IMG/VR virus record: IMGVR_UViG_3300025012_000026
Coordinates: 124,001-188,000 of that record
Direction: 5' to 3' (one strand)
DNA: 64,000 nucleotides
A program made the position numbers and the translations under genes. Below, piece after piece: positions 24,357 to 64,000 of this stretch. The stretch's first letter is position 1. Each line of letters opens with the position of its first letter. The notes beneath the pieces were generated by a model. The model was not told the DNA's origin. It saw only the letters and a program-made list of their open reading frames with translations, and did not search any database.

Positions 24357-24837
24357 TTATTAAATCTCTCCTTCTTATTTTAAATTCCGTTCAAATCGAC
24401 TTTCTATTCTAAAACAAATTCATTATAATTTTTATGCCACAAAGTACATAATTCTTCACAATTATTTTTATTACAATCTTTACAAGTCATTGAACTTACT
24501 TCATCGCACTTTAACATATCGTTCATAGACGCTTGTGCAATTTCTACGGTTAATTTATACTCTTTTGCCAATTCTTTAACAATTGGATCGTTTATTGAAT
24601 AACCTTTCATAACGTACATCCTCCTTCCTAAAGTCTATGAAAGAAATCTTTGTTTGGATTATTATTATTTTTACACTAACGAACTATGCAAAATTAATCA
24701 TGAGGCATGGGTCTCTCACCCACACGGATAACTGTTGTAGCCTGAAAAAGTTCCAAAAAATCATCTACAACCGCATTTACACTGTTAAAATTCCAGTTAT
24801 GCTTTTTTAATTATCTTTTCATTACTCACCAATCTTT

Positions 24838-24910
24838 TCACAATTAATGGATTTGAACCATCGATCTTCCCTGACTATGGGGATGCATTTTCCGACTATG
24901 CTATACTGTG
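24838..24910 (-). tRNA. tRNA-like element / pseudo-tRNA with aberrant anticodon loop (nominal AGT, Thr)
   Basis: cloverleaf: acceptor CACAGTA/AATTGTG; D-arm GCAT-AGTCGGAAA-ATGC; anticodon arm TCCCC-ATAGTCA-GGGAA; T-arm GATGG-TTCAAAT-CCATT; no encoded CCA. Confidence 0.65.
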
Positions 24911-24956
24911 AATTTATTTATTGTAACGACATCTTGCTCTGCCACCCATTACAATC

Positions 24957-35495: not shown

Positions 35496-36293
35496 AATTC
35501 TCTCCTCCTGATCAGTGGAGGCGTAGCCACGCTCTACAACTTGCAAGTTCTCCACTAATTTATTTATTATTTGTTTTTATATACACTACCAATTCCAATC
35601 TTCTACAATATCTTGTTCTGCTTTTATTCGATTTTTGATTTGTACTGGTAATTCTTCAACTCTATTATCCCATTCATTTAATTTACTAAGTAAGTCAATA
35701 ATTTGTTGACCACTCTTTTTATATGGATATTTACTATTTAATAATTTGTAGTATTTAAAATAAGTATTAAACCTAATAACTTTATCCATATTTCTCTCCA
35801 CCCTATAAAAGTTAAATTTGATGGATTATGTATGTAATTTAGATAATCTACATTCTTCTAATTGTTTCTGTAATTCCGCTTTTGACACCATATCTCTATA
35901 ATACTCACACTTAGTTGTAATAGTAAATGGTAAACCAAGCATATTTATATCTTTAATCTTACGCTCGACATCAATAGCATAAGGACGTAACCTACATAAA
36001 TCAGTTATTTCACATTTTGCACAATCCATTTACTACCTCCTTTCTGCCAAATAAAATAATCCTTTTAAATGAAGTGTGGAACCCTAATACTTTCACGAAT
36101 TCTTTCATATTCTTCTTCAGAAACTTCCATAAGTATTTCGTCAGAACCTCTTGCTTTAATATACTGTTGCAATTTTACTTTTTCTTTTTCTCCACCAATG
36201 CAAATCATTACATAATTATTAATTCTTGCAGAATATGTTACTAAAAATTTATCGCCTTTCATAATAATCATCCTTTCAATTAATCTCCTTAAA

Positions 36294-50226: not shown

Positions 50227-50258
50227 GTCTACAGTCCCATCACTTAGGGACTGTAGAC
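50227..50258. terminator. stem-loop overlapping the yopR-like stop codon
   Basis: GTCTACAGTCCC-atcactta-GGGACTGTAGAC. Confidence 0.65.
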
Positions 50259-51250
50259 TTAGTTTGTGTTTGCTTATAAGTCTCATACATTTCTTTTAAT
50301 CCTTGCCAACCCCTTTCATCCAATTCTAAGTCTTTAAATAATTGCTTAAAATCTTCAGATTTTAATTCACCAAGTTCTATTTCTTTTTGTAAACATCTGT
50401 CAAGCATACCGGATTGAAATATAAGAGTTGGATTTAAAAATTTAATACCTGTATAAGTTCTAAAGTTTTTAAATCTCGAACTTATATTTCCAACAGTAAT
50501 TTTTTCATCATTGTCACTACTTTTCCTGTCAAGTGTTCTAAGAATATATGGAGTATCTTTAACAGGCATAATAGCAAATCTTCCGGTATCTTCTCCATTT
50601 GATTTATGATAAGTGTCTTCAATGCAAGCCATTCGCAATATTTCCATAGTCCTTGGATCTACAGTTATAGGTCTTGGTCGAGGATTTTTAATTTTGTCAT
50701 CTGGATCTCTAGTTATAATAACTATATTTGATTCAGGGTCTAGATCACTCATTTTTAGATTTCTTAATTCTTCATAGGTGTGTCCTTTTATTGTTCTGCC
50801 TCTGATATTTTCATATAATGATGCCATTAATGCTTTATCGACATAATTATACAATCCGTCACAATAATCATACATTTGTTCTCTAGTGATATAGGAATTT
50901 CTCTGAGCTACTTGATGGATATATTTTGGTAAATCTTCTTTTTTATCAACTAATTTCAATACGTTCATTGAACTGTAATTGTTAAATAAACACCAATCAA
51001 GATATTGCATGATAATTGTATAAGATACACCTAATGATTTAAGAGATTTCTTTTTCATTCCAATTAGTAATTCTTTTACTTCCTCGTAACTAAATTTGCT
51101 CAAATCTTTGTTTTTTTCATGCTCGAATCTACTAACACTTTTTAAGATAGAGGTATTTGTCACTCTAGTGCTTTCATTAGGATATTTCTCATCAAGAAAA
51201 CGATTTTTCAATTCTTCGTTAAATAAAGTTCTTTCAATAGTTAATGACAT
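50240..51250 (-). CDS. mrpR: SPbeta YopR/MrpR (SroF)-like master repressor with a tyrosine-recombinase fold
   Basis: FNEELKNRFL, KDLSKFS..V.ELL, QYLDW, YITRE, L.NY..KA....L.E, Y...NG and FLNP..I..SG.L blocks match recalled YopR; HxxR catalytic motif absent; follows a yopQ homolog. Confidence 0.8.
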   Translation of the reverse strand: MSLTIERTLFNEELKNRFLDEKYPNESTRVTNTSILKSVSRFEHEKNKDLSKFSYEEVKELLIGMKKKSLKSLGVSYTIIMQYLDWCLFNNYSSMNVLKLVDKKEDLPKYIHQVAQRNSYITREQMYDYCDGLYNYVDKALMASLYENIRGRTIKGHTYEELRNLKMSDLDPESNIVIITRDPDDKIKNPRPRPITVDPRTMEILRMACIEDTYHKSNGEDTGRFAIMPVKDTPYILRTLDRKSSDNDEKITVGNISSRFKNFRTYTGIKFLNPTLIFQSGMLDRCLQKEIELGELKSEDFKQLFKDLELDERGWQGLKEMYETYKQTQTKSTVPK

Positions 51251-52605
51251 TATGATACCTCCTTCTGAAGTTGATAAACAACATCTTTAAAATAATCAGA
51301 AATCTTTTTAAATGTAGATAAATTTACATGATTTTCGATTCCAATTTTTTTCCAAATTTTATTTGATTTATCGAAATCTAAAGAGTTTAATACTTTTACT
51401 AATCTAGGTTTCCAGTCATCACCATATTCTTGTCTTAATAAATCTCCTAAAATAATATACCCCATAAACATGTTGTTATGTGCAAGATATGAATTTTCTT
51501 TGGTATTAGATAATTCTGTTTTAAACTTTGAATAATTGAGTCCAATAATATTATTGAACAACTCTACAATATCATTTTCAACTTGTGCGGTTCTAATAAC
51601 TGGCTCCTCTTTAAGATCATAAAGAAATTCAATGGATTTTGATAAAGTATCAAATGTCATTAATTTGTTTTCAATAATCAATTCCTTTTCATTTAAGGCT
51701 ATACGATTAAACATTTCGTTTGCCCTTTGTCTAGAATTAATAGCTTTTGCTACTTCCATATTTGGATTGGCTGTATTTTTAAAATCAACCCATTCAGTTT
51801 CAATTTGTGTACTTTTACTTTCTTGTCGAATTATTTCATTGGCACGCTCTTCTGTAACGTGGTGAATATAAATTGATGTAACCCTATCTATGTCATTCTT
51901 AATTTCAACAGTTTTTAACATGCCACAGGTTCTATTTGCACCATCAATTATGTCTACTAACGTAGACGCATTATCTGGTTCAATTAATAACGTTCTAGTT
52001 TTAAGATCATACTTAAACTTTTCTTGTCCATTTATTTTGCGAATGTTCCACATAATAGCATTAGTGCAAAAAGAACCATCTATCATTGACTCTGTAATTT
52101 CTGATACCTTTTTGCTGTCAATATTAATAGATTCAACAATTCTGTTTCCACTTCGTCTTTTTAAAAGTTGTCTTTGAGTATTTGGATTATATGTTAATAG
52201 TCCATTACCCATATAAAGATTAATATTTTGATAAGTTTCCTTTGTACATAACCATTGACTATCATCTATTTGATCGACATTATGAAGTAAAATATACTTA
52301 ACTTTTTCTTTATCAAGTTTTTTGTAATAATCAGCAGAAGACAATTCAATCTCTGTAAAGAACTCATCTGGATTTATTTCTGTTCGGTGAGTGTATCCAT
52401 AAAGATATTTTGTAAATAAACATAGTTCAATTTCTTCAACATAAACCAAAGGAATTGCTTTAGTGAATATACCTGTAGTTCTGCCCCTCGGTATACCTCT
52501 TTCTAATAATTTGCCTATGACTTGCTCTTGAATTTGATTGTCATTTGAATAATCTTCAATGACTAAATTAAGAATATCCTCAAGAATTTGACGATCTTGT
52601 TTCAT
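51250..52605 (-). CDS. yopQ: SPbeta YopQ (SroE)-like DndB/DGQHR-family protein
   Basis: INP..FFTE.E, LL.YNPN.QR, DIIDGANR (DGQHR variant) and LDFDK.NK.W..IG blocks; about 451 aa; RBS places the start at MKQDRQ. Confidence 0.8.
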   Translation of the reverse strand: MKQDRQILEDILNLVIEDYSNDNQIQEQVIGKLLERGIPRGRTTGIFTKAIPLVYVEEIELCLFTKYLYGYTHRTEINPDEFFTEIELSSADYYKKLDKEKVKYILLHNVDQIDDSQWLCTKETYQNINLYMGNGLLTYNPNTQRQLLKRRSGNRIVESINIDSKKVSEITESMIDGSFCTNAIMWNIRKINGQEKFKYDLKTRTLLIEPDNASTLVDIIDGANRTCGMLKTVEIKNDIDRVTSIYIHHVTEERANEIIRQESKSTQIETEWVDFKNTANPNMEVAKAINSRQRANEMFNRIALNEKELIIENKLMTFDTLSKSIEFLYDLKEEPVIRTAQVENDIVELFNNIIGLNYSKFKTELSNTKENSYLAHNNMFMGYIILGDLLRQEYGDDWKPRLVKVLNSLDFDKSNKIWKKIGIENHVNLSTFKKISDYFKDVVYQLQKEVS

Positions 52606-52678
52606 AATATTTATTCCTCCTTTTGACATATCAGCAACAAGTTATGTTGCTATGTATTGGTTAATAATACGCAATGCT

Positions 52679-52777
52679 ATTATAATATATAATATGCCAA
52701 TACGTCAAGAAGAATGCCTGATTAGTTTTATTATTTATGATTATATCATTATAACATTATTGATTGCATAATGTCAA
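52679..52777 (-). promoter_or_regulatory. two tandem sigma-A promoters upstream of yopQ-yopR
   Basis: TTGACA(52772-77)-18-TATAAT(52748-53) and TTGACG(52703-08)-18-TATAAT(52679-84). Confidence 0.6.
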
Positions 52778-52816: not shown

Positions 52817-53638
52817 TTAATTAATCATATTCTCATAATCTTGATTCCCAACATTTTCACAAACCATTTGTGCTGTTTTTTCTTTGCATAAATAATGATT
52901 AATTACCATTAGTAACCATGTTAAAAATATTACTGGAATAGATGTTATTATAACAATAGCAATTAGTTCATCAATAAATTGTAATTTAATTATAATGCTA
53001 TTGTTTTCTACTAATTTGTTCATATAATTTACCACTAGAACTCTAGTTGACAATACTAACAACAAACCACTAATAATAAATTTATTTCTGATAACCGAAC
53101 TAAATAGATTAATTTTTACTTTGCTGTTTTTTCTAACTAGAATTAAGGAAACAATACATAGATGCAAAATTTTGATTGGAATGGCCCATAAGATATTGTA
53201 CATGACATTATCATTAAAAAAACTATATGGCTTATCTAATAACGATAATAGAAGTGGACAGTATGCGTATTCTATTATTCCTACAATGACGAAGCTTCCG
53301 ACTGTATAGATTGCTGTTTTAAATATTAATGATATGTTTATGTCAAAACTGTTTGTGATGACTATGTATTCCATTAAGATTATCATTAGAAACATAATTG
53401 ATAATATAGAATTTTGTTTTGGTACTATGATAATATACTTGAAGATATTTGCCATTATTGCTACTGGTAATGCTGTGAGCATAATCCATGTTAGACTACG
53501 TTTCCACATTAAAATATCTAGTAGATCATTAATTTTTAAAAGTGATAATGCGATGATTACAATGAACATTTGTTCAGGGAGGCCAACAAATATGGTGTTT
53601 AGGATGGCATTTGTTATGGATTGCATATGGGTGTTCAC
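52817..53638 (-). CDS. polytopic membrane protein B, AgrC-sensor-like without kinase domain
   Basis: about 7 TM segments; MQ.ITNAILN....LPE..F motif shared with 55463-56272; directly downstream of agrB; no H-box or GHKL domain. Confidence 0.7.
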   Translation of the reverse strand: MNTHMQSITNAILNTIFVGLPEQMFIVIIALSLLKINDLLDILMWKRSLTWIMLTALPVAIMANIFKYIIIVPKQNSILSIMFLMIILMEYIVITNSFDINISLIFKTAIYTVGSFVIVGIIEYAYCPLLLSLLDKPYSFFNDNVMYNILWAIPIKILHLCIVSLILVRKNSKVKINLFSSVIRNKFIISGLLLVLSTRVLVVNYMNKLVENNSIIIKLQFIDELIAIVIITSIPVIFLTWLLMVINHYLCKEKTAQMVCENVGNQDYENMIN

Positions 53639-53644
53639 TCCTTT

Positions 53645-54277
53645 TTATTTTATTTTTGAATCTAGCGCAGAATAAACAATTTGCCCTATTCTGCTTATAC
53701 TAAATAATTCTAATAATAATCCAAAACAACTTGAAATTACAATAATCTTTAGATTGAAAAGTAGGGAGATGGTCATTATGATTGTCCATATAAATAGATA
53801 ATATGATGACCATCTTTTGAATTTTTTGATTTCTAATGGCTCTGTGATTGGTTTATTTGGTGTATCTCTAGGTACATAACGATAAATTATATACATTGTC
53901 ATTACAACACAGAAATTGAATAAATACCACATGTCTATAAATGACCAATATTGGAGTGTATATTTGATTAATAATGCTGATCCAATGAACTGAATGGTTG
54001 AAAAAGTTATACATTTATTATATTCCCCGAAATGGTATCCACCTGCTATGATACGTAAACTACTGAAGGTCAAGGCGATTATTAGGGTAGGAAGCTTTAT
54101 GCTAAAAATAGATGCTAAAGATACCATTAACATAGCCTTAAAAATAGCACCCCAAACTACCATGAAACCATATGTGAAAACCTCAATCTGATCTTCTACG
54201 GTAGGATATTTATCATTAGGTACTTTTTTTGCTAACCACTTAGCAGAATGATTTGATACAAATTCTATAAAACTCAT
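53645..54277 (-). CDS. agrB: AgrB autoinducing-peptide processing membrane cysteine protease
   Basis: E...YG; LRIIAGGYH......C (conserved Arg/His/Cys); P.DTPNKPI; about 210 aa, multi-TM. Confidence 0.92.
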   Translation of the reverse strand: MSFIEFVSNHSAKWLAKKVPNDKYPTVEDQIEVFTYGFMVVWGAIFKAMLMVSLASIFSIKLPTLIIALTFSSLRIIAGGYHFGEYNKCITFSTIQFIGSALLIKYTLQYWSFIDMWYLFNFCVVMTMYIIYRYVPRDTPNKPITEPLEIKKFKRWSSYYLFIWTIIMTISLLFNLKIIVISSCFGLLLELFSISRIGQIVYSALDSKIK

Positions 54278-54304: not shown

Positions 54305-55129
54305 TCATGCATAAGCCACCTGTTGCCCTACACTAGTATAATTATTTTCTTGTATATTCTGTCTGATTGGTTTAACTTTATTTAGATTTTTCAAAGTCTC
54401 TATTGCTTCCTCTTCGTTTACATGTAATTCTAAAATACCCTCAGATTTCATAAGGGCAATTTCAACTTTCAACATTATATTTGAAGGACATTCAGCGACT
54501 TTTTGAAATACTCCATTCTTTCCTATTAATCTTCTTTTTGATATTGTGTTTGGTAATTCACAACATATAATAGAGTCCTGTGGGATATTACATTCTTTAC
54601 TGCTTGCGAAAACGTGAGTCGGCATCTTAGCTTTGGATCTAGTTGTCATCGCTATGACAATAGAGTTGCTAGAGCAAGCATTCCCCTTATTATTTTGCAC
54701 CACAAGCACCATTCTTGGGCCGCCTACTTCACTATCTATCCCTTTGTCACCAAAGTCTGCGAAACAAAAATCTCCTCTTCTGACACGAATATTTTTTATT
54801 TGCTCTAAATCATTATTTGCATATAAAGAGTATCCACATGCTATTTTTAGATCCTGCAACGAAACCCTACCTTCTGAATTATTTGCGAAAACATTGAGGG
54901 TTTGAACGTTCGGATAAACATTTATTTTTTCACGAACGATAAGTTCTATGTACCCTCCTTCAATTTTGCAGTCTGCTCCAAAATTATTGATTGTCCTATG
55001 GGTTCCTTTAGCAAGCATAATTAAACTAGCTAGTTTCTTAAAATCCTTTTTGGCATTTACCTCAGTGTTGGTGGTATTAGTTGATTTGGCAAATAATTTG
55101 TTGAACATAATAATGCACATCCTTTTCAT
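54305..55129 (-). CDS. XRE-type HTH - MazF/PemK endoribonuclease fusion
   Basis: N-term L..AKG..RTIN.F...C.I...YI......P....L..FA....G.VS...L..ACGY (XRE HTH); C-term RRGD..FAD.G....SE.GG.R..LVVQN..GN..S....IAMTT...K.PTH...DS.I.CE...TISK.RL (MazF); probable start MFNKLF at 55108. Confidence 0.85.
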   Translation of the reverse strand: MKRMCIIMFNKLFAKSTNTTNTEVNAKKDFKKLASLIMLAKGTHRTINNFGADCKIEGGYIELIVREKINVYPNVQTLNVFANNSEGRVSLQDLKIACGYSLYANNDLEQIKNIRVRRGDFCFADFGDKGIDSEVGGPRMVLVVQNNKGNACSSNSIVIAMTTRSKAKMPTHVFASSKECNIPQDSIICCELPNTISKRRLIGKNGVFQKVAECPSNIMLKVEIALMKSEGILELHVNEEEAIETLKNLNKVKPIRQNIQENNYTSVGQQVAYA

Positions 55130-55132
55130 ATT

Positions 55133-55201
55133 TAATAAGATATAAAATAATTTTCTTTAACTGATAGTATAATTATATCTTATTATGTATGGATATGTCA
55201 A
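55133..55201 (-). promoter_or_regulatory. promoter of the HTH-mazF/agrB/sensor-B operon with overlapping inverted repeat (candidate operator)
   Basis: TTGACA(55196-201)-18-TATAAT; 13-bp perfect IR TAATAAGATATAA (55133-45) / TTATATCTTATTA (55173-85). Confidence 0.7.
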
Positions 55202-55240: not shown

Positions 55241-55270
55241 TATAGGAGAGAACCGAAGTCCTCTCCTATA
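55241..55270 (-). terminator. UUCG-tetraloop stem-loop after agrD
   Basis: minus strand TATAGGAGAGGAC-TTCG-GTTCTCTCCTATA; no poly-U tail. Confidence 0.65.
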
Positions 55271-55287: not shown

Positions 55288-55407
55288 TTATTTATTTAGA
55301 CATTTAGGATCTTTTGGTTGATAAGAAAACGCCCAAGAAGCCATATTTGATGTAAATAGTGCTAACATAGATACTAATCCAGCAAGAACAATATATACTT
55401 TCTTCAT
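55288..55407 (-). CDS. agrD: AgrD cyclic (thio)lactone autoinducer propeptide, 39 aa, missing from the ORF track
   Basis: MKKVYIVLAGLVSMLALFTSNMA-SWAFS-YQPKDPKCLNK; RBS AAAGGAGGTG; amphipathic leader and clostridial (H/Y)QPxxPxxL tail. Confidence 0.9.
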   Translation of the reverse strand: MKKVYIVLAGLVSMLALFTSNMASWAFSYQPKDPKCLNK

Positions 55408-55462
55408 GTTAATGTCACCTCCTTTCCAAGAATTTATTTATATAACAAATGCCTTAATCATC

Positions 55463-56272
55463 TTAATCAATAAGATTTTCTTGCGTTTGCTGTATACGTT
55501 TTTCTATACCGACTACACAATTTATCATATACCACAACACCATAAGAAATATAGTTGGTAGACTTAGAATGAATCCTATTGATAATATTTGTTCCCAAAT
55601 TGGCAATGTGCTTAAGATATTATTATATCCTATCAATTTCACAACATAAATTGTAAATAGTGTTAAGAAAGATATTATAAAAATTATCATATTGGTTAAT
55701 GGTTTATTTTTGAACACTAAATTGTACAATTTGATATTTACTTGTTCATTCATCTTAACTATAAAAAATATTATTATTGAGAATTCTAAAATTCTAGAAG
55801 GAATTACTAGTAAAAACATATAAGAAATATTTTGATTAAAATATTCATAAGGAATTTTTAACAATGAAAACGTTAGTGGCATATAAGCTAATTCAATTAA
55901 ACTGACTATTATTAGAGTAATCATTGAGTAAACTATGGTTTTAAATATTAGTTTATTTTCTTGAGTTATTTCAGTAATTCTTATTATGTAAATAATCGCC
56001 AACCAAAATATTATTAATGAGATTATTGATGTTAATAATTTAGGCAAAATTATAATATACTTAAAAATACTTATACACATTGCCATCAGCAATGAAGGTA
56101 TTATAATCCACTTAATATTTATTCTCCACATTCTTATGTCAAGTAAATCAAATCTTTTGAACAATATTAATGTCATACATGTTACAAATATTTCTTCAGG
56201 TAAGGATATAAGAACCATGTTCAATAAAGCATTTGTTACACCTTGCATATGTATTACCTCTTTCTTATTCAT
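55463..56272 (-). CDS. polytopic membrane protein A, AgrC-sensor-like without kinase domain
   Basis: about 7 TM segments; paralog of 52817-53638; directly upstream of agrD; probable start MQGVTN at 56248. Confidence 0.7.
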   Translation of the reverse strand: MNKKEVIHMQGVTNALLNMVLISLPEEIFVTCMTLILFKRFDLLDIRMWRINIKWIIIPSLLMAMCISIFKYIIILPKLLTSIISLIIFWLAIIYIIRITEITQENKLIFKTIVYSMITLIIVSLIELAYMPLTFSLLKIPYEYFNQNISYMFLLVIPSRILEFSIIIFFIVKMNEQVNIKLYNLVFKNKPLTNMIIFIISFLTLFTIYVVKLIGYNNILSTLPIWEQILSIGFILSLPTIFLMVLWYMINCVVGIEKRIQQTQENLID

Positions 56273-56329: not shown

Positions 56330-56941
56330 TTATTGATTCATATATACCTTATTAATTTCTTTGACTGAACAGTAAACTATTATAAAAGCAAATATTCTTA
56401 TTAAAATATCACCAATACTCCAAATTGACATACCAAATATATCAAATATATCGGACAAAAATATTAGATTTGTCATATGATCACCTAAAACATGAAAATC
56501 ATTAAACTTAGAAGCATTCATAATCATATCATACTGAGTGTAACCAGTTGAATAAGATACATCTGGGAAAATAGGCATCATCCCATGATTAAAGTACATT
56601 ACAATATAATTCAATACAAATCCACACAAGAGACTACAACAAGCGATAATATACTCTTTATACTTCTCATGCCTAAATAGAACATCAAGTCCTAGAATCA
56701 TATATGATCCTAATATAGCATTCTTTATTATGTGTTGATATTGAAGAAAGTAGTAATTTTGATTCATTATTGTATATTGTAGATAGATGTAAAATATAGA
56801 CATTAATATAACTGGATAGATACTCCATCTTTTTAGTATTGGTTTTATATTGTATGATTCTTTATGTATTTGGAATTTTCCTAGTTTTATGTAAAGATAT
56901 ATTTTAGAGAATATGAGCGATGCTATTAGTGTCTCGACCAT
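56330..56941 (-). CDS. DUF5317-family membrane protein
   Basis: LNYIVM..NHGMMPI...H......T.L.FLSDI.......SIGDI pattern; multi-TM. Confidence 0.7.
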   Translation of the reverse strand: MVETLIASLIFSKIYLYIKLGKFQIHKESYNIKPILKRWSIYPVILMSIFYIYLQYTIMNQNYYFLQYQHIIKNAILGSYMILGLDVLFRHEKYKEYIIACCSLLCGFVLNYIVMYFNHGMMPIFPDVSYSTGYTQYDMIMNASKFNDFHVLGDHMTNLIFLSDIFDIFGMSIWSIGDILIRIFAFIIVYCSVKEINKVYMNQ

Positions 56942-57001: not shown

Positions 57002-58738
57002 CTACGGAGGTTTATTATTTTGATCTTTAATCATATTCTCATAATCTACTAAATACATCCATTTAAGTAATTCACCAGTCTCAAGATCTTTACCACATGT
57101 TTTTTGTTTATTTTTGCAACATCTTCCAATTCCGACACGATTTATATTATATTCTTTTGATGCGTTTGCAATAGAATTGAATACTTTGTTTGTTGTCAAA
57201 CATATTATCTTCATATCTCTTGAACTATGTAGTATATACTTTATTTCTTGTTTATCTTTAAAAATATATTCTTCGTAATACATCCAAACCATCTTTTCCC
57301 CTGTTTCGGGATGTTTTCCTGCCGATTTTTGTATACCTAAACAACATGATGAAATATCACTATTCCTTATATTATACTTACTTGTTGCATCAGTTATAGA
57401 ATTAAAAATTTCATTAGTTGTTAAACAAACAACTTTTGTTTGCATTACTTCTTTAGTATCATAATCACACCACCCCAATTCTACACCTTGTTTTAAATAT
57501 CTAGAAACTGTAGAGGTATGAACCTTTATTATATCTGCTATTTCTACAGTCCTTTTAATTCCACTATTCCATAAATTACATGAAATTTTAACTAAACTTG
57601 AACATCCAGCCTCATGACACTTCAACCAATCTATATCTTTTTCTTTAAAATTAAGTAATATGGGCAATCTAGACCTCATTATGCTATTCTTTATCCACTC
57701 TAACTCAGACTTTCTACAATCGATTATTATGTAATTATTAATATTGTTTGTTCTCGCTAACCACTCTTTATCAAAATCATTTTCCTGAACTTCTGCTAAT
57801 GAAACTTTCCAATTACCTGTTATTTCTTCATAATGCTGAATTCCTTGAATTTCAATGACAATTTTATCTAATTTTTCTATGTAAAAATCATATCTGTATC
57901 CACCACACCATTTAAAAGTTATTTTACTCAATTGAGATTTAAAATTTAGATGTAATTGTTCTAAAAAAGATAGAAAGAACTTCTCTGGATAACTCACACC
58001 ATCGGAACATCTAGGGCAAGCAAATCCATGTACTACTAAGGTGCTAAAATTTAAATTTTTATCATATCCACAATCTGGACATTTCATAGGTATTTTTGGA
58101 TTTGATCCAAAAGAATGTTTATTTGCATCTTCTTTATTTACCAAATACTTAATTAAATGTGGATGAGTTGTCACAACCATATTACACATATTGCAATCAA
58201 GACTTCCATTTTGTCCATTTGTAAAACTACTAATACTTTTTAATTCACTTTCATGTTCTGGATGTTCTAAACACTTAAACCAATAACCTTTTTTATTAAA
58301 ACCTGCGGAACTAAAGCTTACATCATTAGGGCTTAATACTTTCCCATTTTTTATATTTTTTGCATCATCCCATCTAGATAATATCCAATCTGCCAATTCT
58401 TTAGGGAGATTATCGTAACACCATTGATAAAAAGATTTACTATTTTTTAATTTTGTAATTCTTCCATTTTCACTCACAAACAGTTTTATGGCACATTTTA
58501 TACAATAATATTTTTCACCCTCATGTCTTAAATCTATATAATGTCGCCATATGACATTTTTTATAATTTCTCCGCAACCATCACACTGAATATCGACTAA
58601 TGCGTGTGAACTATGAGGTAAATCCTCTACTTTCACTTCGAATTCATTGCCCATTTTTGTAAAGATATAATCTCTTTGTTCATAATATTTTTTAATACTT
58701 GCATTCCATTTCATTTTTACGGTTTTAGTTATTAACAA
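57002..58738 (-). CDS. homing-endonuclease-like protein (Zn-ribbons + DUF559/Vsr-like nuclease + NUMOD1 repeats)
   Basis: several CxxC ribbons; S.PE...YDFYI...IEIQGIQHY; C-terminal KVVCLTT..F.SI..A repeats and KSAGKHP.TGE..W shared with 34290-35495. Confidence 0.8.
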   Translation of the reverse strand: MLITKTVKMKWNASIKKYYEQRDYIFTKMGNEFEVKVEDLPHSSHALVDIQCDGCGEIIKNVIWRHYIDLRHEGEKYYCIKCAIKLFVSENGRITKLKNSKSFYQWCYDNLPKELADWILSRWDDAKNIKNGKVLSPNDVSFSSAGFNKKGYWFKCLEHPEHESELKSISSFTNGQNGSLDCNMCNMVVTTHPHLIKYLVNKEDANKHSFGSNPKIPMKCPDCGYDKNLNFSTLVVHGFACPRCSDGVSYPEKFFLSFLEQLHLNFKSQLSKITFKWCGGYRYDFYIEKLDKIVIEIQGIQHYEEITGNWKVSLAEVQENDFDKEWLARTNNINNYIIIDCRKSELEWIKNSIMRSRLPILLNFKEKDIDWLKCHEAGCSSLVKISCNLWNSGIKRTVEIADIIKVHTSTVSRYLKQGVELGWCDYDTKEVMQTKVVCLTTNEIFNSITDATSKYNIRNSDISSCCLGIQKSAGKHPETGEKMVWMYYEEYIFKDKQEIKYILHSSRDMKIICLTTNKVFNSIANASKEYNINRVGIGRCCKNKQKTCGKDLETGELLKWMYLVDYENMIKDQNNKPP

Positions 58739-58805: not shown

Positions 58806-59228
58806 TTATGCATACACAATATTCTTATCTTTCTGACCTATTGAGAATTGAATAAGTATACCTTGATTTATACGTTCCATAGTTTCAGAATTACAATATC
58901 CAACTTTCTTCAAAAATATATCTTCATTTTTGTTAACTAACATAACTTGTTCACAGAGAGCAATAGAATCTCTTAATAGTCCTGAAGAGTTTTTATTTAT
59001 GCTTTTGTGAGTTGGTAATTTTGACTTCGTGCCGATAGAACTAATTGGACATATATGCACAACTGGACTGTAGCGATTTGCCATATTATTACTTACAATT
59101 ATGCATGGACGCAATTTTCCTTGGATAGATCCCTTGCCTTCTCCTAGATCAACTAACCATATCTCTCCTCGATTAAATTGTTGTGGTTGTTGAACATTAT
59201 TTATTACATTTTGCATAATAATTATCAC
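58806..59228 (-). CDS. mazF: MazF/PemK (NdoA-like) endoribonuclease with no adjacent antitoxin
   Basis: RGEIWLVDLG...GS.QG..RPCIIVSN...NRYSP....PISS...KLPTH...GL.RDS.AL.EQ. Confidence 0.9.
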   Translation of the reverse strand: MIIIMQNVINNVQQPQQFNRGEIWLVDLGEGKGSIQGKLRPCIIVSNNMANRYSPVVHICPISSIGTKSKLPTHKSINKNSSGLLRDSIALCEQVMLVNKNEDIFLKKVGYCNSETMERINQGILIQFSIGQKDKNIVYA

Positions 59229-59340: not shown

Positions 59341-59611
59341 TTACCACCATAAACTAGGCAAACACAATGCAAATATATTAACTATATCTTCTACTTTTTC
59401 TTTCTGCTCGTCAGTCCTTTTCATTGTACATAGATAATCTTTCATATAACCATAGTTTAAATGTGAAGTCCATTGACCAAGTTTCTTTTTCATCAAAACC
59501 ATATATTTCTCTTTCTTTAATCCATCGTTCTTGCCTTGAATCATCTTTATTCCAACCTTGAGGAGTATTGTCTTCTAATATACCAAGGTCTTTAAGATAT
59601 TTACCTAACAT
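59341..59611 (-). pseudogene. probable internally deleted or frameshifted phage gene
   Basis: N-part ...GFDEKETWSMD..F..WLYERL.MY.E ends at 59411; a plausible C-terminus (...FALCLPSLWW) lies in another frame ending at 59341. Confidence 0.45.
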
Positions 59612-60318
59612 TTATTTTCCTCCTCTAACCCCTTAAATGCCATAATAGCAACCTCTAATTGTTCCACACTTGGTTCCTTTGTGAAAATATATTTCTGCAA
59701 TAAACTTCCTACAAAATAAATTGGCTTAACAAACCACTTAATAATCCTATTATCAGATCTCATTACTTCATATGTAATTCCCCATCCTAATAACATTGCT
59801 CCAGAATGAACTAATGAAACTAATAATCCACTAATTATAATTAATCCAATATACAAATTAGTTCCACAATTATCATTTACACAACTTTGATTCATTGATG
59901 TTTCAATCGACACTTTACCATTTATTTCGTAATCATTTACCACTTTATGTTCTGCTCCATGATAATATTTCGTTTTACTACATTTATTAAATAACAACAT
60001 AAAAATAGGCAATATAATGAAATTATGATAGTTACTGTTTTGTAGACTGCTTGGTTCAAAATTGTATAGACCATAAGAATAAATAAGACTTAGTGCCAAT
60101 AATAACAAACCAAATTTTGTAAAAATTAATTTTAATATAATCCAATATGCTCTAGCAAAAGGTATTCTGTAAAGAAAATTCTCTAAAATATTTTGCTTAT
60201 CATCTTTGAGTATTTTATTTACAATAATATTATTGCCTTTTCTTATTGCTGTTGAAGTATGAGTTTCTGATTCAAACATTACATTATTGTATCCTGCTCT
60301 ACCACCTAGTAAATTCAT
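59605..60318 (-). CDS. DUF1385 (YqhQ-like) membrane metal-binding protein
   Basis: GGRA....VMF, IPF.R, YHGAEHKV, CGTN and LQKY..TKEP...QLEVA motifs. Confidence 0.85.
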   Translation of the reverse strand: MNLLGGRAGYNNVMFESETHTSTAIRKGNNIIVNKILKDDKQNILENFLYRIPFARAYWIILKLIFTKFGLLLLALSLIYSYGLYNFEPSSLQNSNYHNFIILPIFMLLFNKCSKTKYYHGAEHKVVNDYEINGKVSIETSMNQSCVNDNCGTNLYIGLIIISGLLVSLVHSGAMLLGWGITYEVMRSDNRIIKWFVKPIYFVGSLLQKYIFTKEPSVEQLEVAIMAFKGLEEENKC

Positions 60319-61457: not shown

Positions 61458-61832
61458 TCATCTACATAACTTTAAATTTTTTAACCAATTTAATTCTTTT
61501 GGAAAATCATCATAATCGATAATTCCCATATTAATACATGTCAATGTATTAGGTTCTAAATCCGTCCATCCTCTATCTCTGATAGCGATATAACCTTTAA
61601 CTTCTAATTCCTCTAATTTTGATTGCGGAGCATAAAGAATAATTTTCTTTTGATAATTCGTCATATATAATTCAATAGTTGAATCGTATTCCTTACTCTC
61701 ATCAATCATAAAATTATAAAAATATACTGCTACTGCGTGTCCGACTTGACCTGCAAGTTTTCCTTTATTGATTTCAATATCTTCATTAACTAATATATAC
61801 ATTCTTAAATCCATAATTAAATCTCCTATCAA
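61458..61832 (-). CDS. pth2: peptidyl-tRNA hydrolase, Pth2 family
   Basis: MYILVN.D....KGKLAGQVGHA...KIIL...I.DRG.TD...T.TC. Confidence 0.85.
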   Translation of the reverse strand: MIGDLIMDLRMYILVNEDIEINKGKLAGQVGHAVAVYFYNFMIDESKEYDSTIELYMTNYQKKIILYAPQSKLEELEVKGYIAIRDRGWTDLEPNTLTCINMGIIDYDDFPKELNWLKNLKLCR

Positions 61833-62316: not shown

Positions 62317-64000
62317 TTATTTCAAAACTCTCGCTCTAATTTCTGCTAAACTTTCATCTCTTACTAATTTTCCATCAATAAATACATCTTCAAGTAAATC
62401 AATAATATCAATTGCATCTTTTTCCATTTCATTTAATCCATCAACCAAATAGATACCATTTTCACCATCAACTACTGCAACCATTCCTTTTTGAGATTTT
62501 TTGATTCCACCAATATCGGTTTTAGGATCTTTAAAGATAAACTTTTCAACTCCATCAATAACCGTATAAGTGGCCTTTAAAGCGAACGAAAATGTGTCTC
62601 TGGTGTGATAACCTAAAGAATAACTTCCAACTCCGTATACGATGTTTTCTGCTGAAAACCCCTTTGCTTCTAATTGTTTGAAAGTTTCTTCTGCAATTTC
62701 TGGACTTATGCTATCTCCATATATTAAGCCCACATGACTATCTAGTACCTTATACCCTTTACTATTAATAGTTCCTCCAAAGGTATCCCATAATGCTTCT
62801 ACAGAACCCTTTTGCTCTATAGTTAATTTTACTTCTTTACAAATATGAACATTAGCACCATCAATATAATAATATTGTTTATCATGTCTATTCCAATCAA
62901 TTTCAATAACAATTTCATAATGCTTATCTTGAAATTTAAAAATTGCATCTTGCCTAGAAATACCATGTTCTCCATGAGGTGTATCATTTCTTATATCGTC
63001 AATTATTCTCTCCAACATAATTTCCTTGCAATCTTCCAGATTATCACAATATTCTTCATTGGTTAAATCTTCAACAATCACATTACCGCAAATAATCTTT
63101 ATTGGACTTCCAGAATCAGGACGAATGACACACTTACCATTTCTACTCATAATATCATCTTTCAATGAAGGTAAAATATTCCCCAAGACATTAAAATAAT
63201 CATACCCATCACTAACTATACTTACAATTCCACTAGGGGCAACTTCAGTAATCATTCTCTTAAAATATCTCAAATCATCTTGATATCCACATTGAATACT
63301 ATGTTCCGTTGCTAACACACTTGCTGAAACTAATTCCTTTTCCACATTAACACCATAATATTGCTCTAAATATTGAATACTTGGAATCGTATCACTACCA
63401 GTAAAATATAATAAATGTCCTGCTCCTGTAGTTACTGCATCTTCATGACCACTCATACCTCTATAACTAAAATTATGACATTGCCATTGAATATGATCTT
63501 TACTATCACATGTTTTCTCAGCCCACTTTTCACAAATGTCTCTATATTTCTTTACAATTGTTGTTGCAGTAATTACTTTCCACATATTTGCGGAAATCAA
63601 TGTCTCTAAGAAATTAGTCAACCAATAGAACTCTTTTTTAGTATTTTCAATTGTAAACACAGGAACTTTCATTGGAATCAATGTGCCTTCTTTTACTGCC
63701 TTGATTTTAATAGGAAGGTATCCTAAATCATGTAATGCTTCAATATGAGTTGTATCTGCACAATTATCTCCTAGAGAATTTTTAATGATTCTTTTATAAT
63801 CTGCAACTACTATTGATTTATCAACATTGAAAAAGTTTTCATTGAAATTATCAATTAGATAATCTTTAATAAATCCTTGTAAACCAAAGAATACTACTTC
63901 ATTAATTCCTTCAATTCTTGAATGTCTAGGCGTAAATGTAGAATAAATTTTTTCTGTACCTTTTTCACTCATAATGAGGTGGCTTATTTTGTACGAATCT
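62317..64000 (-). CDS. nicotinamide phosphoribosyltransferase family (Nampt/NadV or Namat), 5' end beyond the window
   Basis: frame continues to the window edge as ...DSYKISH; FFGLQ, HNFSYRG, ATEHS, VSDGYD, IRPDSG, IYGDSI, GVGSY and KDPKTD...KKSQKG motifs. Confidence 0.92.
   Translation of the reverse strand, partial: DSYKISHLIMSEKGTEKIYSTFTPRHSRIEGINEVVFFGLQGFIKDYLIDNFNENFFNVDKSIVVADYKRIIKNSLGDNCADTTHIEALHDLGYLPIKIKAVKEGTLIPMKVPVFTIENTKKEFYWLTNFLETLISANMWKVITATTIVKKYRDICEKWAEKTCDSKDHIQWQCHNFSYRGMSGHEDAVTTGAGHLLYFTGSDTIPSIQYLEQYYGVNVEKELVSASVLATEHSIQCGYQDDLRYFKRMITEVAPSGIVSIVSDGYDYFNVLGNILPSLKDDIMSRNGKCVIRPDSGSPIKIICGNVIVEDLTNEEYCDNLEDCKEIMLERIIDDIRNDTPHGEHGISRQDAIFKFQDKHYEIVIEIDWNRHDKQYYYIDGANVHICKEVKLTIEQKGSVEALWDTFGGTINSKGYKVLDSHVGLIYGDSISPEIAEETFKQLEAKGFSAENIVYGVGSYSLGYHTRDTFSFALKATYTVIDGVEKFIFKDPKTDIGGIKKSQKGMVAVVDGENGIYLVDGLNEMEKDAIDIIDLLEDVFIDGKLVRDESLAEIRARVLK

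What the first reader, a model, noticed from the sequence alone, without database searches (positions are those of the whole stretch)
55288..55407. Unannotated AgrD propeptide predicting a Ser-linked pentapeptide ring (SWAFS)
Seen: a 39-aa ORF MKKVYIVLAGLVSMLALFTSNMASWAFSYQPKDPKCLNK with a perfect SD, below the ORF-track cutoff. Known: clostridial AgrDs have a leader, a 5-residue ring starting at Cys (or Ser), and an (H/Y)QPxxPxxL tail that AgrB removes. Inference: the ring is S-W-A-F-S closed through the Ser hydroxyl (a lactone, possibly rearranging to a cyclic homodetic peptide), giving a phage-specific signal likely distinct from host thiolactone AIPs.
Basis: partly seen in the sequence, partly recalled or inferred. 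Interest (0 to 1): 0.8.

Follow-up and report, generated by a model that had tools for sequence, protein, structure and literature searches.

The report
Phage AgrD peptide with serine ring
A large Clostridium-type phage carries a real, conserved gene for an AgrD signalling-peptide precursor whose five-residue ring starts with serine, inside a cassette that has the AgrB maturation enzyme but kinase-less sensor-like membrane proteins instead of the usual receptor kinase.

Summary
Confirmed. The 39-codon ORF lies on the minus strand at 55288-55407, behind AAAGGAGGTGA. It passes NCBIfam TIGR04223 (AgrD; 30.8 bits, cutoff 19). AgrB, with its His/Cys dyad, lies 1 kb downstream.

About 40 distinct related loci keep the ORF. 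Most are metagenomic phage contigs of up to 237 kb. Median dN/dS is 0.16.

The residue five positions before the (H/Y/N/F)QP tail is always Ser or Cys. Ring positions 2-5 differ about four times more often than the rest of the peptide. The layout (Ala|Ser-x4|Tyr...Pro) is in register with Clostridium thermocellum AgrD, whose Ser-lactone pentapeptide was detected by LC-MS/MS. SWAFS closed through Ser24 is therefore the best reading. The chemistry itself is untested.

No AgrC kinase or AgrA was found among the 30 window ORFs scanned. agrD instead travels as a hypervariable module with a 269-aa seven-helix membrane protein. That protein's predicted fold resembles AgrC/VirS sensor domains, but it has no kinase. 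A second, orphan copy follows agrB. A MazF-fusion gene with its own consensus promoter separates agrD from agrB.

Phage agr genes (phiCDHM1) and Ser-lactone AIPs are both known. This is a new variant, not a new kind. The claim that the signal differs from host thiolactone signals is unsupported.

The parts
55288..55407 (-). agrD: 39-aa AgrD propeptide. It has a leader (residues 1-23), the predicted ring S24-W-A-F-S28, and a tail Y29-Q-P-K-D-P-K-C-L-N-K.
   Evidence: TIGR04223 30.8 bits against a cutoff of 19. Conserved in about 40 distinct relatives. Median dN/dS 0.16.
55415..55425 (-). Shine-Dalgarno sequence AAAGGAGGTGA of agrD.
   Evidence: Read directly from the sequence. The same motif stands before the ATG in nearly all relatives.
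55241..55270 (-). Conserved 13-bp RNA hairpin with a UUCG loop, starting 18 nt after the agrD stop and lacking a U tract. It is a likely 3'-end or stability element or terminator for the upstream transcription unit.
   Evidence: dG -19.7 kcal/mol, z -3.95. It is present in all phage-type relatives. In 21 sequences, 6 of 10 pairs show compensatory changes.
55172..55201 (-). Consensus sigma-70-type promoter TTGACA-18-TATAAT (12 of 12) between agrD and the MazF-fusion gene.
   Evidence: The same promoter lies about 80 nt after the agrD stop in at least 22 relatives.
55463..56272 (-). TM269: a seven-helix membrane protein with no kinase, immediately upstream of agrD. It is the candidate cognate AIP sensor.
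   Evidence: No Pfam, NCBIfam or PHROG hit. AF2 model pLDDT 84, pTM 0.80. Atlas structure matches to HATPase_c_5 / VirS kinases, TM 0.64-0.76 normalised by the query-side model. All 150 listed relatives of 256 are 56-326 aa, too short to carry a kinase domain. It co-varies with the AgrD ring and leader.
54305..55129 (-). MazF-fusion gene. It has an N-terminal helical domain of unknown family (about residues 27-112), a MazF/EndoA endoribonuclease domain (about 113-230), and a C-terminal tail. The true start is probably the ATG at 55108.
   Evidence: PF02452 E 1.7e-17. PDB profile hits E 2e-27 to PemK/EndoA. Foldseek target-normalised TM about 0.9. The start follows JGI gene calls and the family consensus.
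53645..54277 (-). agrB: the AgrB membrane peptidase/cyclase.
   Evidence: PF04647 E 1.4e-34. His82 and Cys89 are invariant in 30 homologues.
52817..53638 (-). TM273: a paralogue of TM269 (39% identity) downstream of agrB, with no AgrD of its own in the window. It is a candidate orphan sensor.
   Evidence: It belongs to a clade of 14 downstream copies nested inside the upstream copies that accompany SWLxx rings. The AgrD HMM hits the window only once.
56330..56941 (-). DUF5317 membrane protein, present upstream of the TM gene in nearly all phage-type loci that cover that side.
   Evidence: PF17248 E 1.9e-18. Synteny.
58806..59228 (-). Stand-alone MazF/PemK-type toxin gene at the 5' edge of the cassette.
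   Evidence: PF02452 E 6.4e-24. Present at this position in most relatives.
57002..58738 (-). HNH/NUMOD homing-endonuclease gene inserted between MazF and DUF5317. It is a mobile insert and not part of the system.
   Evidence: phrog_4538, phrog_559 and phrog_9084. It is present, absent or located elsewhere in relatives.

Best explanation
The ORF is the agrD gene of a phage-borne agr-like peptide signalling cassette.

Shown by sequence and comparison:
- It is a translated 39-aa AgrD-family precursor.
- An AgrB with the catalytic His/Cys pair lies 1 kb downstream.
- A Ser (Cys in a few relatives) is fixed five residues before the (H/Y)QP tail.
- The ring is hypervariable.
- agrD travels as one module with an equally hypervariable seven-helix membrane protein.

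Inferred:
- AgrB cuts between Ser28 and Tyr29 and transfers the acyl group to the Ser24 hydroxyl, giving a five-residue lactone SWAFS (neutral monoisotopic mass 578.249, [M+H]+ 579.256).
- The leader is then removed at or near Ala23|Ser24. If the cut is exact, this gives a tail-less ring that could shift to the all-amide cyclopeptide.
- The secreted peptide is read by TM269, a sensor with an AgrC/VirS-like fold and no kinase. A second, orphan sensor TM273 may read SWL-type peptides made by related phages.
- The output does not run through AgrC/AgrA phosphotransfer. No kinase and no LytTR regulator is in the cassette.
- The partners conserved in every phage locus are a MazF-fusion protein, transcribed with agrB from its own consensus promoter, and a DUF5317 membrane protein. 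The bacterial relatives carry an XRE HTH regulator in their place.
- The most likely role is phage-to-phage (lysogen-to-lysogen) density sensing in a c-st-like large temperate or plasmid-type phage. It would be organised in specificity groups like the staphylococcal agr types.
For: AgrD identity: TIGR04223 30.8 bits against a cutoff of 19. AgrB PF04647 E 1e-34, with H82/C89 invariant.

Conservation: about 40 distinct orthologues at a fixed position about 1 kb upstream of agrB. Median dN/dS 0.16. The SD is conserved.

Ring register: position -5 is Ser in most sequences. It is Cys in L054, L056 and L072 and in L095, L101 and L102. It is never any other residue. Ring positions 2-5 differ at 0.50 per site, against 0.13 per site for the rest of the peptide. 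C. thermocellum AgrD has the same A|S-x4|Y...P layout, and its cyclic Ser pentapeptide was found in supernatants (PMC5322536).

Module behaviour: against the window, L009 and L012 have AgrB 81-92%, MazF-fusion 93-94% and DUF5317 84% identical, but TM 41-42%, leader 15% and ring SWYFA. L030, L031 and L040 have AgrB only 53-60% but TM 68-70%, leader 50-55% and rings SFAFT/SFAFS. Clades of the TM tree coincide with ring types.

Sensor-like fold: the AF2 model has pLDDT 84 and seven long helices. Atlas structure matches have TM 0.64, 0.76 and 0.58 to 433-453-aa HATPase_c_5 kinases, including a VirS cluster.

Phage origin: DNA polymerase III alpha is 53% identical to that of Clostridium phage c-st. 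PHROG replication genes are present. Identical IMG/VR contigs reach 227-230 kb.
Against: - No chemistry, expression or binding data exist. No RNA run holding the region was listed.
- The sensor assignment rests on predicted-structure similarity only. Profile comparison with phiCDHM1-type AgrC N-termini was negative, and PDB and BFVD fold searches found nothing.
- Co-variation of TM269 with agrD can also come from physical linkage. It would equally fit a leader peptidase or an exporter, because the leader co-varies too.
- The residue before the Ser is not always signal-peptidase-like in relatives (Phe in L030, L031 and L040; His in L021). A tail-less product is therefore not assured.
- No downstream regulator has been identified in the phage. 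Only the 30 largest ORFs of the 64-kb window were scanned, and the rest of the roughly 230-kb genome was not examined.
Confidence: 0.72

Rival explanations
1. The gene is agrD, but the adjacent TM269/TM273 proteins are biosynthetic partners rather than receptors. They would act as a leader peptidase or exporter, in the way MroQ serves S. aureus AgrD. The signal would then be read by a host-encoded AgrC/VirS-type kinase, so the phage would be speaking into or jamming the host's own agr circuit.
For: The AgrD leader co-varies with the TM protein as strongly as the ring does. The TM gene sits between agrB and agrD in the bacterial relatives. No kinase or regulator is present in the phage cassette. 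A membrane protease is known to be needed for AIP maturation in S. aureus (PMC9388083, seen, title and abstract only).
Against: The family has no conserved His and no CAAX-protease motifs; its invariant residues are P25, E26, E127, P132, P158 and P239. The only recurring predicted-fold similarity is to the sensor domains of HATPase_c_5 kinases. A second copy without its own AgrD makes little sense for a processing enzyme.
Confidence: 0.2
2. The mature product differs from a Ser-lactone pentapeptide. It could keep an N-terminal exocyclic tail because the leader is cut further upstream. Alternatively, if it is tail-less, it could exist mainly as the homodetic all-amide cyclopeptide after an O-to-N acyl shift.
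For: The residue before the Ser is Phe or His in some relatives, which is a poor signal-peptidase site. Tail-less thiolactone AIPs of Clostridia rearrange to lactams, and the fate of Ser-lactones is stated to be open (PMC8251862).
Against: The C. thermocellum Ser pentapeptide, with the same A|S layout, was reported as the cyclic pentapeptide matching a synthetic lactone standard (PMC5322536). In the window the -1 residue is Ala.
Confidence: 0.3
3. The ORF encodes a small secreted or membrane peptide unrelated to agr, such as a bacteriocin-like or holin-like peptide, and the AgrD resemblance is compositional.
For: Pfam and PHROGs give no hit. Short hydrophobic peptides match weak models easily.
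Against: The score is above the curated NCBIfam cutoff. The ORF co-occurs with AgrB in about 40 phage-type loci and is found beside AgrB in most of the bacterial loci examined. The (H/Y)QPxxP tail and the S/C at -5 are conserved, as in characterised AgrDs.
Confidence: 0.03

Closest known systems
Clostridium (Acetivibrio) thermocellum AgrD Clo1313_2818 and its cyclic pentapeptide (Verbeke et al. 2017, PMC5322536)
   Same: It has the same layout residue for residue. The leader ends in Ala, a Ser nucleophile follows, the ring has five residues, and then come Tyr and a Pro six residues into the tail (A24|S25..F29|Y30..P35, against A23|S24..S28|Y29..P34 here). The product lacks an exocyclic tail and is closed through Ser rather than Cys.
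   Different: It is chromosomal and bacterial, and it is not next to any agrB, agrC or agrA. Here the gene is in a phage, in a fixed cassette with AgrB and sensor-like proteins. The ring sequence differs.
agr3 locus of Clostridioides difficile phage phiCDHM1 (Hargreaves et al. 2014, PMC3901668)
   Same: It is a phage-borne agrD plus agrB without agrA. Its AgrD also has Ser at -5 (SVWYI before NQPKMPKSL) and no Cys.
   Different: phiCDHM1 is a 54-kb myovirus with gene order agrC-agrB-agrD and a full 453-aa AgrC kinase (HATPase_c_5). Here the order is sensor-agrD / MazF-fusion-agrB-sensor and the sensors lack a kinase. AgrB is too distant for tblastn; it matches the profile of this clade's AgrB at only 34 bits.
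Brevibacillus phages Davies, Emery and Abouo (noted in PMC3901668)
   Same: They are phages with AgrB, a putative 39-aa AgrD, and one or two membrane proteins lacking a HATPase domain.
   Different: Their membrane proteins (gp44, gp45) show no detectable similarity to the TM family here (hhalign probability below 1%). They have no MazF fusion and no DUF5317. Their AgrD lacks the (H/Y)QP tail layout.
Staphylococcal agr specificity groups (S. aureus agr I-IV) and the Ser-lactone AIP of S. intermedius/pseudintermedius (own knowledge; 'rare cases' in PMC8251862)
   Same: A hypervariable block made of the AIP and its sensor is flanked by conserved genes, giving pherotypes. Ser can replace Cys as the ring nucleophile.
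   Different: The staphylococcal sensor is the N-terminal half of the AgrC kinase and signals to AgrA. There the gene order is agrB-agrD-agrC-agrA in one operon, and the AIPs carry exocyclic tails.
Bacterial three-gene AgrB-TM-AgrD loci with a convergent XRE regulator (found here in metagenomes and MAGs of Bacillota)
   Same: They have the same TM family (E 1e-71 to 1e-78 against the phage profile), the same AgrB clade (37-44% identity) and the same AgrD tail. Most rings use Ser.
   Different: The gene order is agrB-TM-agrD. The TM protein is about 40 aa longer. An HTH_3 regulator stands where the phage has no counterpart, and there is no MazF fusion or DUF5317. I found no description of these loci in the literature searched.

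Membership tests
AgrD family autoinducing-peptide precursor (NCBIfam TIGR04223) | Score above the curated family cutoff | tested here: met
   30.8 bits against a cutoff of 19, E 2.4e-7, covering residues 2-39 of 39.
AgrD family autoinducing-peptide precursor (NCBIfam TIGR04223) | Cys or Ser nucleophile five residues before the AgrB cleavage site | tested here: met
   Ser24 lies five residues before Tyr29-Gln-Pro. The aligned position is S or C in all of about 45 distinct relatives and never anything else.
AgrD family autoinducing-peptide precursor (NCBIfam TIGR04223) | Charged C-terminal recognition tail with a conserved Pro about six residues after the cleavage site | tested here: met
   The tail is YQPKDPKCLNK. 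Pro34 is the sixth tail residue, as in C. thermocellum (Y30..P35) and phiCDHM1.
AgrD family autoinducing-peptide precursor (NCBIfam TIGR04223) | Genomic association with AgrB carrying the catalytic His and Cys | tested here: met
   AgrB lies at 53645-54277 on the same strand. H82 and C89 are invariant. It is not directly adjacent: one gene and a promoter lie between.
AgrD family autoinducing-peptide precursor (NCBIfam TIGR04223) | Processed to a secreted cyclic (thio)lactone peptide | not testable with these tools
   This needs expression and mass spectrometry. The predicted cyclic SWAFS has [M+H]+ 579.256.
Canonical agrBDCA quorum-sensing operon | AgrC: membrane sensor fused to a HATPase_c_5 histidine kinase | tested here: not met
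   No kinase domain was found in any of the 30 window ORFs scanned with Pfam or PHROGs. The adjacent TM proteins are 269 and 273 aa, and all 150 listed relatives of 256 are at most 326 aa. The rest of the roughly 230-kb genome was not examined.
Canonical agrBDCA quorum-sensing operon | AgrA: LytTR response regulator | tested here: not met
   No LytTR or response-regulator hit was found in the ORFs scanned around the cassette. This covers the window only.
AgrC/VirS-type sensor domain (membrane part only) | Homology or shared fold with the multi-helix sensor of HATPase_c_5 kinases | tested here: inconclusive
   Predicted-structure matches have TM 0.64 (own model), 0.76 and 0.58 (family representative) to 433-453-aa HATPase_c_5 / VirS clusters. 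However, hhalign against phiCDHM1-type AgrC N-termini gave probability below 1%, and there is no solved structure to compare with.
MazF/PemK endoribonuclease (for the gene between agrD and agrB) | MazF fold and family profile | tested here: met
   PF02452 E 1.7e-17. PDB profile E 2e-27 to PemK/EndoA. Foldseek target-normalised TM about 0.9, 38% identity. Catalytic competence was not tested.
Arbitrium-type (AimP/AimR) phage communication | Linear imported peptide read by a cytoplasmic TPR receptor | not tested
   This was considered only as a functional analogy. None of the window ORFs scanned with Pfam showed a TPR hit, but that was not a targeted AimR search. The peptide here is of AgrD type with AgrB.

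The most novel reading that the evidence does not exclude
A whole clade of large c-st-like Clostridium phages may run a private, pherotyped communication system. Each phage would make its own cyclic Ser-pentapeptide and read it with a cognate kinase-less AgrC-like sensor, and many would also carry an orphan sensor tuned to another phage group's peptide. The signal would be coupled to a MazF-type endoribonuclease fusion protein instead of two-component phosphotransfer. That would be an agr-derived counterpart of arbitrium, with eavesdropping built in and an RNase as its output.
Probability: 0.25. Interest if true: 0.85.

Novelty: new variant of a known kind. Interest (0 to 1): 0.62.

Why it matters
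Phage-encoded peptide communication is well worked out for arbitrium. For agr-type signals it rests almost entirely on one unexplored example, phiCDHM1.

This locus is not a one-off. The cassette occurs in about 40 distinct metagenomic loci, most from large phage contigs, and shows clear signs of function. The peptide gene is under purifying selection. The ring is hypervariable and tracks the clades of the adjacent sensor-like protein. The regulatory RNA and promoter elements are conserved.

It gives a concrete, cheap test set: co-express two genes and look for m/z 579.256. It also raises a mechanistic question. How does an AgrC-like sensor without a kinase signal, and is the MazF-fusion protein its output?

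The Ser rings also offer natural material for the open chemical question of whether tail-less Ser-lactone AIPs rearrange to lactams.

Tried and rejected
1. Close relatives among isolated phages. Megablast and blastn of the cassette, and tblastn of AgrB and TM269 against 50,697 phage records, found nothing. tblastn of AgrB against plasmids gave only distant Clostridium AgrBs of 29-35% identity.
It was replaced by an iterated HMM over small ORFs of the fetched loci.
3. Single-sequence AgrB scan of genome contigs: no relative. The alignment-based repeat found 9 loci.
4. TM269 as a recognisable AgrC relative by sequence. hhalign against phiCDHM1 AgrC and a 7-sequence profile of its N-terminus gave probability below 1%. 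The PDB sequence search found nothing. Foldseek against PDB and BFVD gave only E>1 hits to GPCRs and others. Only the Atlas predicted-structure comparison pointed to HATPase_c_5 kinases.
5. TM269 as a relative of the membrane proteins in the Brevibacillus phage Davies agr cassette: negative.
6. My impression that the N-terminal domain of the MazF fusion is an XRE-type HTH was not supported. There was no Pfam hit, no meaningful PDB hit, and hhalign against the XRE regulators of the bacterial loci gave probability 0.8%. I leave it as a helical domain of unknown family.
7. CAAX-protease (MroQ-like) reading of TM269: there is no conserved His and no EExxxR/FxxxH/HxxxN motifs among the invariant columns.
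8. Expression evidence: only three tiny SOLiD metatranscriptomes from the same samples were listed, and none holds the region.
9. Mantel tests of ring identity against each neighbouring gene were all positive, so they do not discriminate. The informative evidence is the discordant loci and the TM tree.
Full report
**1. The observation**

The ORF exists as described but lies on the minus strand: ATG at 55407, stop ending at 55288, 39 codons. Upstream is AAAGGAGGTGA, with the GGAGG core 10 nt before the ATG.

The peptide scores 30.8 bits (E 2.4e-7) against NCBIfam TIGR04223, 'AgrD family cyclic lactone autoinducer peptide', whose curated cutoff is 19. The match covers residues 2-39. Pfam and PHROGs give no hit.

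Public JGI and ENA assemblies do call this exact 39-aa product, in 46 blocks of the collection. It has no Pfam hit on record there. 'Unannotated' therefore means 'unlabelled', not 'uncalled'.

**2. The genome**

All ORFs of at least 120 aa but one (53 of 54) are on the minus strand. PHROG hits include DNA polymerase, helicases, exonuclease, NAD-dependent ligase and homing endonucleases.

The DNA polymerase III alpha subunit is 53% identical to that of Clostridium phage c-st. It is 47-51% identical to those of other large Bacillota phages.

The region is identical in IMG/VR contigs of 227 and 230 kb. It occurs in groundwater and soil metagenome runs. A Clostridium sp. MAG contig carries the same cassette with AgrB 57% identical. 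The host is probably a Clostridium-like Bacillota, but this is not established.

**3. The neighbourhood**

On the minus strand, in order of transcription, the genes are:
- MazF-type toxin, 58806-59228
- HNH/NUMOD homing endonuclease, 57002-58738
- DUF5317 membrane protein, 56330-56941
- TM269, 55463-56272, with no family hit
- agrD, 55288-55407
- a 274-aa protein with a MazF/PemK domain, 54305-55129
- AgrB, 53645-54277 (PF04647, E 1.4e-34)
- TM273, 52817-53638, a paralogue of TM269 (39% identity)
- a DndB-like protein and an MrpR-like recombinase

None of the 20 ORFs of the cassette and its flanks scanned with Pfam, nor the 10 large replication ORFs scanned with PHROGs only, has a histidine-kinase or LytTR domain.

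**4. Conservation**

AgrB has 69 close homologues, almost all unnamed metagenome proteins. Many sit on contigs of 45-237 kb. His82 and Cys89 are invariant among 30 of them, with the spacing expected of the AgrB catalytic pair (the role of the pair is established knowledge for S. aureus AgrB).

I fetched 68 metagenome loci, 15 IMG/VR loci and 9 genome loci. An HMM seeded with two AgrDs and iterated over every 25-80-aa ORF of these loci found one AgrD-like ORF per locus wherever the position was covered. This gave about 40 distinct sequences.

In the phage-type loci the ORF is always about 1 kb upstream of agrB on the same strand. The fixed order is DUF5317 - TM - agrD - MazF fusion - agrB, followed in some by a second TM gene.

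Among 123 close pairs the median dN/dS is 0.16. Several pairs have dS of 0.2-0.5 with no amino-acid change. The SD motif precedes the ATG in nearly all. The ORF is a translated, selected gene.

**5. The ring**

All sequences follow the pattern: leader, then A (usually), then [S/C], four variable residues, [H/Y/N/F]QP, two residues, P, two more residues, and a hydrophobic residue with Lys near the end.

The residue five positions before the QP motif is Ser in most. It is Cys at exactly that column in L054 (CHFWF), L056 (CRFWF) and L072 (CWFHW), and in bacterial loci L095, L101 and L102. No other residue occurs there. An S/C-only column is what a ring nucleophile predicts. It is not what a mere signal-peptidase +1 residue predicts.

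The four residues after it are hypervariable: WAFS, WLFS, YFWS, MFFT, AFWT, AMWS, WYFA, FAFT and others. In close pairs they differ at 0.50 per site, against 0.13 per site for the rest of the peptide.

The register matches the one clostridial Ser-type AgrD with chemical data. In C. thermocellum the leader is predicted to be cut at A24|S25. The pentapeptide S25-F29 is closed by a lactone, Y30 starts the removed tail and P35 is conserved. The cyclic peptide was found in supernatants by targeted LC-MS/MS against a synthetic standard (PMC5322536). The window has A23|S24-W-A-F-S28|Y29...P34.

The phage phiCDHM1 AgrD also has Ser at -5 and no Cys (SVWYI before NQPKMPKSL).

Whether the leader is cut exactly before Ser24 is inferred. 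In some relatives the preceding residue is Phe or His. Whether a tail-less Ser-lactone rearranges to the lactam is stated in the literature to be unresolved (PMC8251862).

**6. The partner membrane proteins**

TM269 has no Pfam, NCBIfam, PHROG or PDB sequence match. A profile of 50 family members found 256 representatives at E ≤ 0.001 in 1.8 billion proteins. All 150 listed are at most 326 aa (the full-length ones 240-326 aa), so none has room for a kinase domain.

The AlphaFold model (pLDDT 84, pTM 0.80) has seven long helices plus a cytoplasmic C-terminal helix. Foldseek against PDB and BFVD found nothing.

In the ESM Atlas, TM269's own model matches a 433-aa HATPase_c_5 'GHKL' kinase cluster with TM 0.64 over 224 residues. 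The representative of the family's 637-member, mostly viral cluster matches a 442-aa HATPase_c_5/SPOB_a kinase cluster (TM 0.76) and a 'VirS' cluster (TM 0.58). HATPase_c_5 is the AgrC/VirS kinase class. Sequence-profile comparison with phiCDHM1-type AgrC N-termini was negative.

I therefore call these proteins AgrC/VirS-sensor-like by predicted fold. Their membership in that family is not established.

**7. Co-variation**

Compared with the window, loci L009 and L012 keep AgrB at 81-92%, the MazF fusion at 93-94% and DUF5317 at 84% identity. Their TM protein is only 41-42% identical, their AgrD leader 15%, and their ring is SWYFA.

Loci L030, L031 and L040 show the reverse. AgrB is only 53-60% identical, but the TM protein is 68-70%, the leader 50-55%, and the rings are SFAFT/SFAFS, one or two changes from SWAFS.

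In a maximum-likelihood tree of 53 TM proteins the well-supported clades coincide with ring types.

agrD and the upstream TM gene thus move together as a hypervariable module between conserved flanks. This is the pattern of staphylococcal agr specificity groups (own knowledge). Physical linkage alone could produce it, and the leader co-varies as well. The data do not by themselves separate 'receptor' from 'processing or export factor'.

The second copy argues for a receptor. The 14 downstream TM genes, including TM273, form one clade (support 100/99). That clade is nested inside the upstream copies that accompany SWLxx rings and is sister to the SWLFA one. They have no AgrD of their own, and the AgrD HMM hits the window only once.

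**8. Transcription signals**

A 13-bp hairpin with a UUCG loop lies 18 nt after the agrD stop, at 55241-55270 (dG -19.7 kcal/mol, z -3.95). It is present in all phage-type relatives. Across 21 sequences, 6 of 10 pairs show compensatory changes. It has no U tract.

A perfect TTGACA-18-TATAAT promoter follows at 55201-55172. It is conserved about 80 nt after agrD in at least 22 relatives.

The cassette therefore probably forms two units. The first is DUF5317-TM269-agrD, ending at the hairpin. The second is MazF fusion-agrB-TM273, from its own strong promoter. This is inferred from sequence; no transcript data exist.

**9. The MazF fusion**

Residues about 113-230 are a bona fide MazF/EndoA domain. 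The PDB profile gives E 2e-27, and Foldseek gives target-normalised TM about 0.9 at 38% identity.

Residues about 27-112 form five confident helices of no recognisable family. My guess that this is an XRE-type HTH failed the test.

The gene does not co-vary with the TM/AgrD module. If it is the output, it must contact a conserved part of the sensor. The N-terminal 50 residues and the C-terminal helix are the most conserved stretches of the TM family.

**10. Bacterial relatives**

Several Bacillota metagenome and MAG loci carry agrB - TM (about 275-322 aa) - agrD followed by a convergent HTH_3 (XRE) regulator. They lie on contigs with ordinary chromosomal genes. In L089, L096 and their like, the TM protein matches the phage TM profile strongly (E 1e-71 to 1e-78). 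In L095 and L101 it matches only weakly (E 5e-7 and 1.5e-6).

Their rings are mostly Ser-type (SWLNL, SFWGF, SWWNF, SIFSF) and sometimes Cys-type.

This shows two things. The kinase-less TM protein is a core partner of this AgrB/AgrD clade and not a phage oddity. And a Ser ring does not distinguish phage from host. I found no paper describing these loci or DUF5317.

**11. Comparison with what is known**

Phage agr genes were first reported in phiCDHM1, which has agrD, agrB and a full AgrC kinase but no AgrA. The same paper noted Brevibacillus phages with AgrB, a putative AgrD and membrane proteins lacking a HATPase domain (PMC3901668). Those membrane proteins are not detectably related to the family here.

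Ser-closed AIPs are known, from C. thermocellum and as 'rare cases'.

The finding is thus a new variant of a known kind. It is a sure AgrD family member and a likely Ser-lactone pentapeptide, set in a cassette architecture not described before: split transcription units, kinase-less sensors in one or two copies, and MazF-fusion and DUF5317 partners.

**12. Verdict**

It is untested in its chemistry and unsupported in its contrast with host signals.

My confidence that this is a functional agrD is about 0.95. That the mature ring is SWAFS closed through Ser24, about 0.7. That TM269 is the cognate sensor, about 0.5. That the MazF fusion is the output, about 0.25.

Noticed in passing
window 55241-55270 (minus strand): A conserved 13-bp hairpin with a UUCG loop lies right after agrD and has no U tract. 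Across 21 related loci, 6 of 10 pairs show compensatory changes. It may be a terminator, a processing site or a stabiliser.
   Followed up: partly
window 55172-55201 and 52748-52777 (minus strand): Two perfect 12/12 sigma-70 consensus promoters (TTGACA-18-TATAAT) are present. One lies before the MazF fusion-agrB unit and one before the DndB-like gene. The first is conserved in many relatives.
   Followed up: partly
window 52817-53638 (minus strand): TM273 is a second sensor-like protein without its own AgrD. Its clade is nested among sensors that accompany SWLxx rings, which suggests cross-listening to another phage group's peptide.
   Followed up: partly
window 58806-59228 and 54305-55129 (minus strand): Two MazF/PemK-type genes sit in one cassette, one stand-alone and one fused to an unknown N-terminal domain. 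I recognised no antitoxin gene next to either. The small ORFs at 59341-59611 were not examined.
   Followed up: no
window 57002-58738 and 34290-35555 (minus strand); L005 6714-8327; L083 6218-7783: Homing-endonuclease genes (HNH/NUMOD, GIY-YIG) are inserted at different points of the cassette in different relatives. In L005 one lies between agrB and a 98-aa remnant of the second TM gene.
   Followed up: partly
window 50240-52629 (minus strand): A DndB-like protein and an MrpR-like tyrosine recombinase form a pair that follows the agr cassette in most relatives. Two very different versions occur (75-98% or about 25% identity to the window's).
   Followed up: no
L089 7247-9588; L060, L063, L095, L096, L101: Bacterial chromosomal loci carry agrB, the same kinase-less TM family, agrD and, except in L096, a convergent XRE HTH_3 regulator. 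This is an agr-like module without kinase or LytTR regulator. I did not find it described in the literature searched.
   Followed up: partly
L093 26176-26289 (phiCDHM1 agrD): The published phage AgrD of phiCDHM1 has Ser, not Cys, at the ring position (SVWYI before NQP) and contains no Cys at all. The 2014 paper does not mention this.
   Followed up: yes
L016 5773-6552: One relative carries a second copy of the MazF-fusion gene after the downstream TM gene.
   Followed up: no
window 24837-24911 (minus strand): A single tRNA-Thr (anticodon AGU) is the only Rfam or ARAGORN hit in the 64-kb window.
   Followed up: no
window 62317-63972, 61458-61832, 59605-60318 (minus strand): Auxiliary genes lie beside the cassette: nicotinamide phosphoribosyltransferase, a PTH2-type peptidyl-tRNA hydrolase and a DUF1385 membrane protein.
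   Followed up: no
AgrD tails in window 55288-55320 and relatives: A Cys in the removed C-terminal tail (P-K/N-C-L/M) is nearly invariant in the phage clade, but it is Ser, Ile, Asn, Ala or His in several bacterial relatives and Ser in phiCDHM1. Its role is unknown.
   Followed up: no
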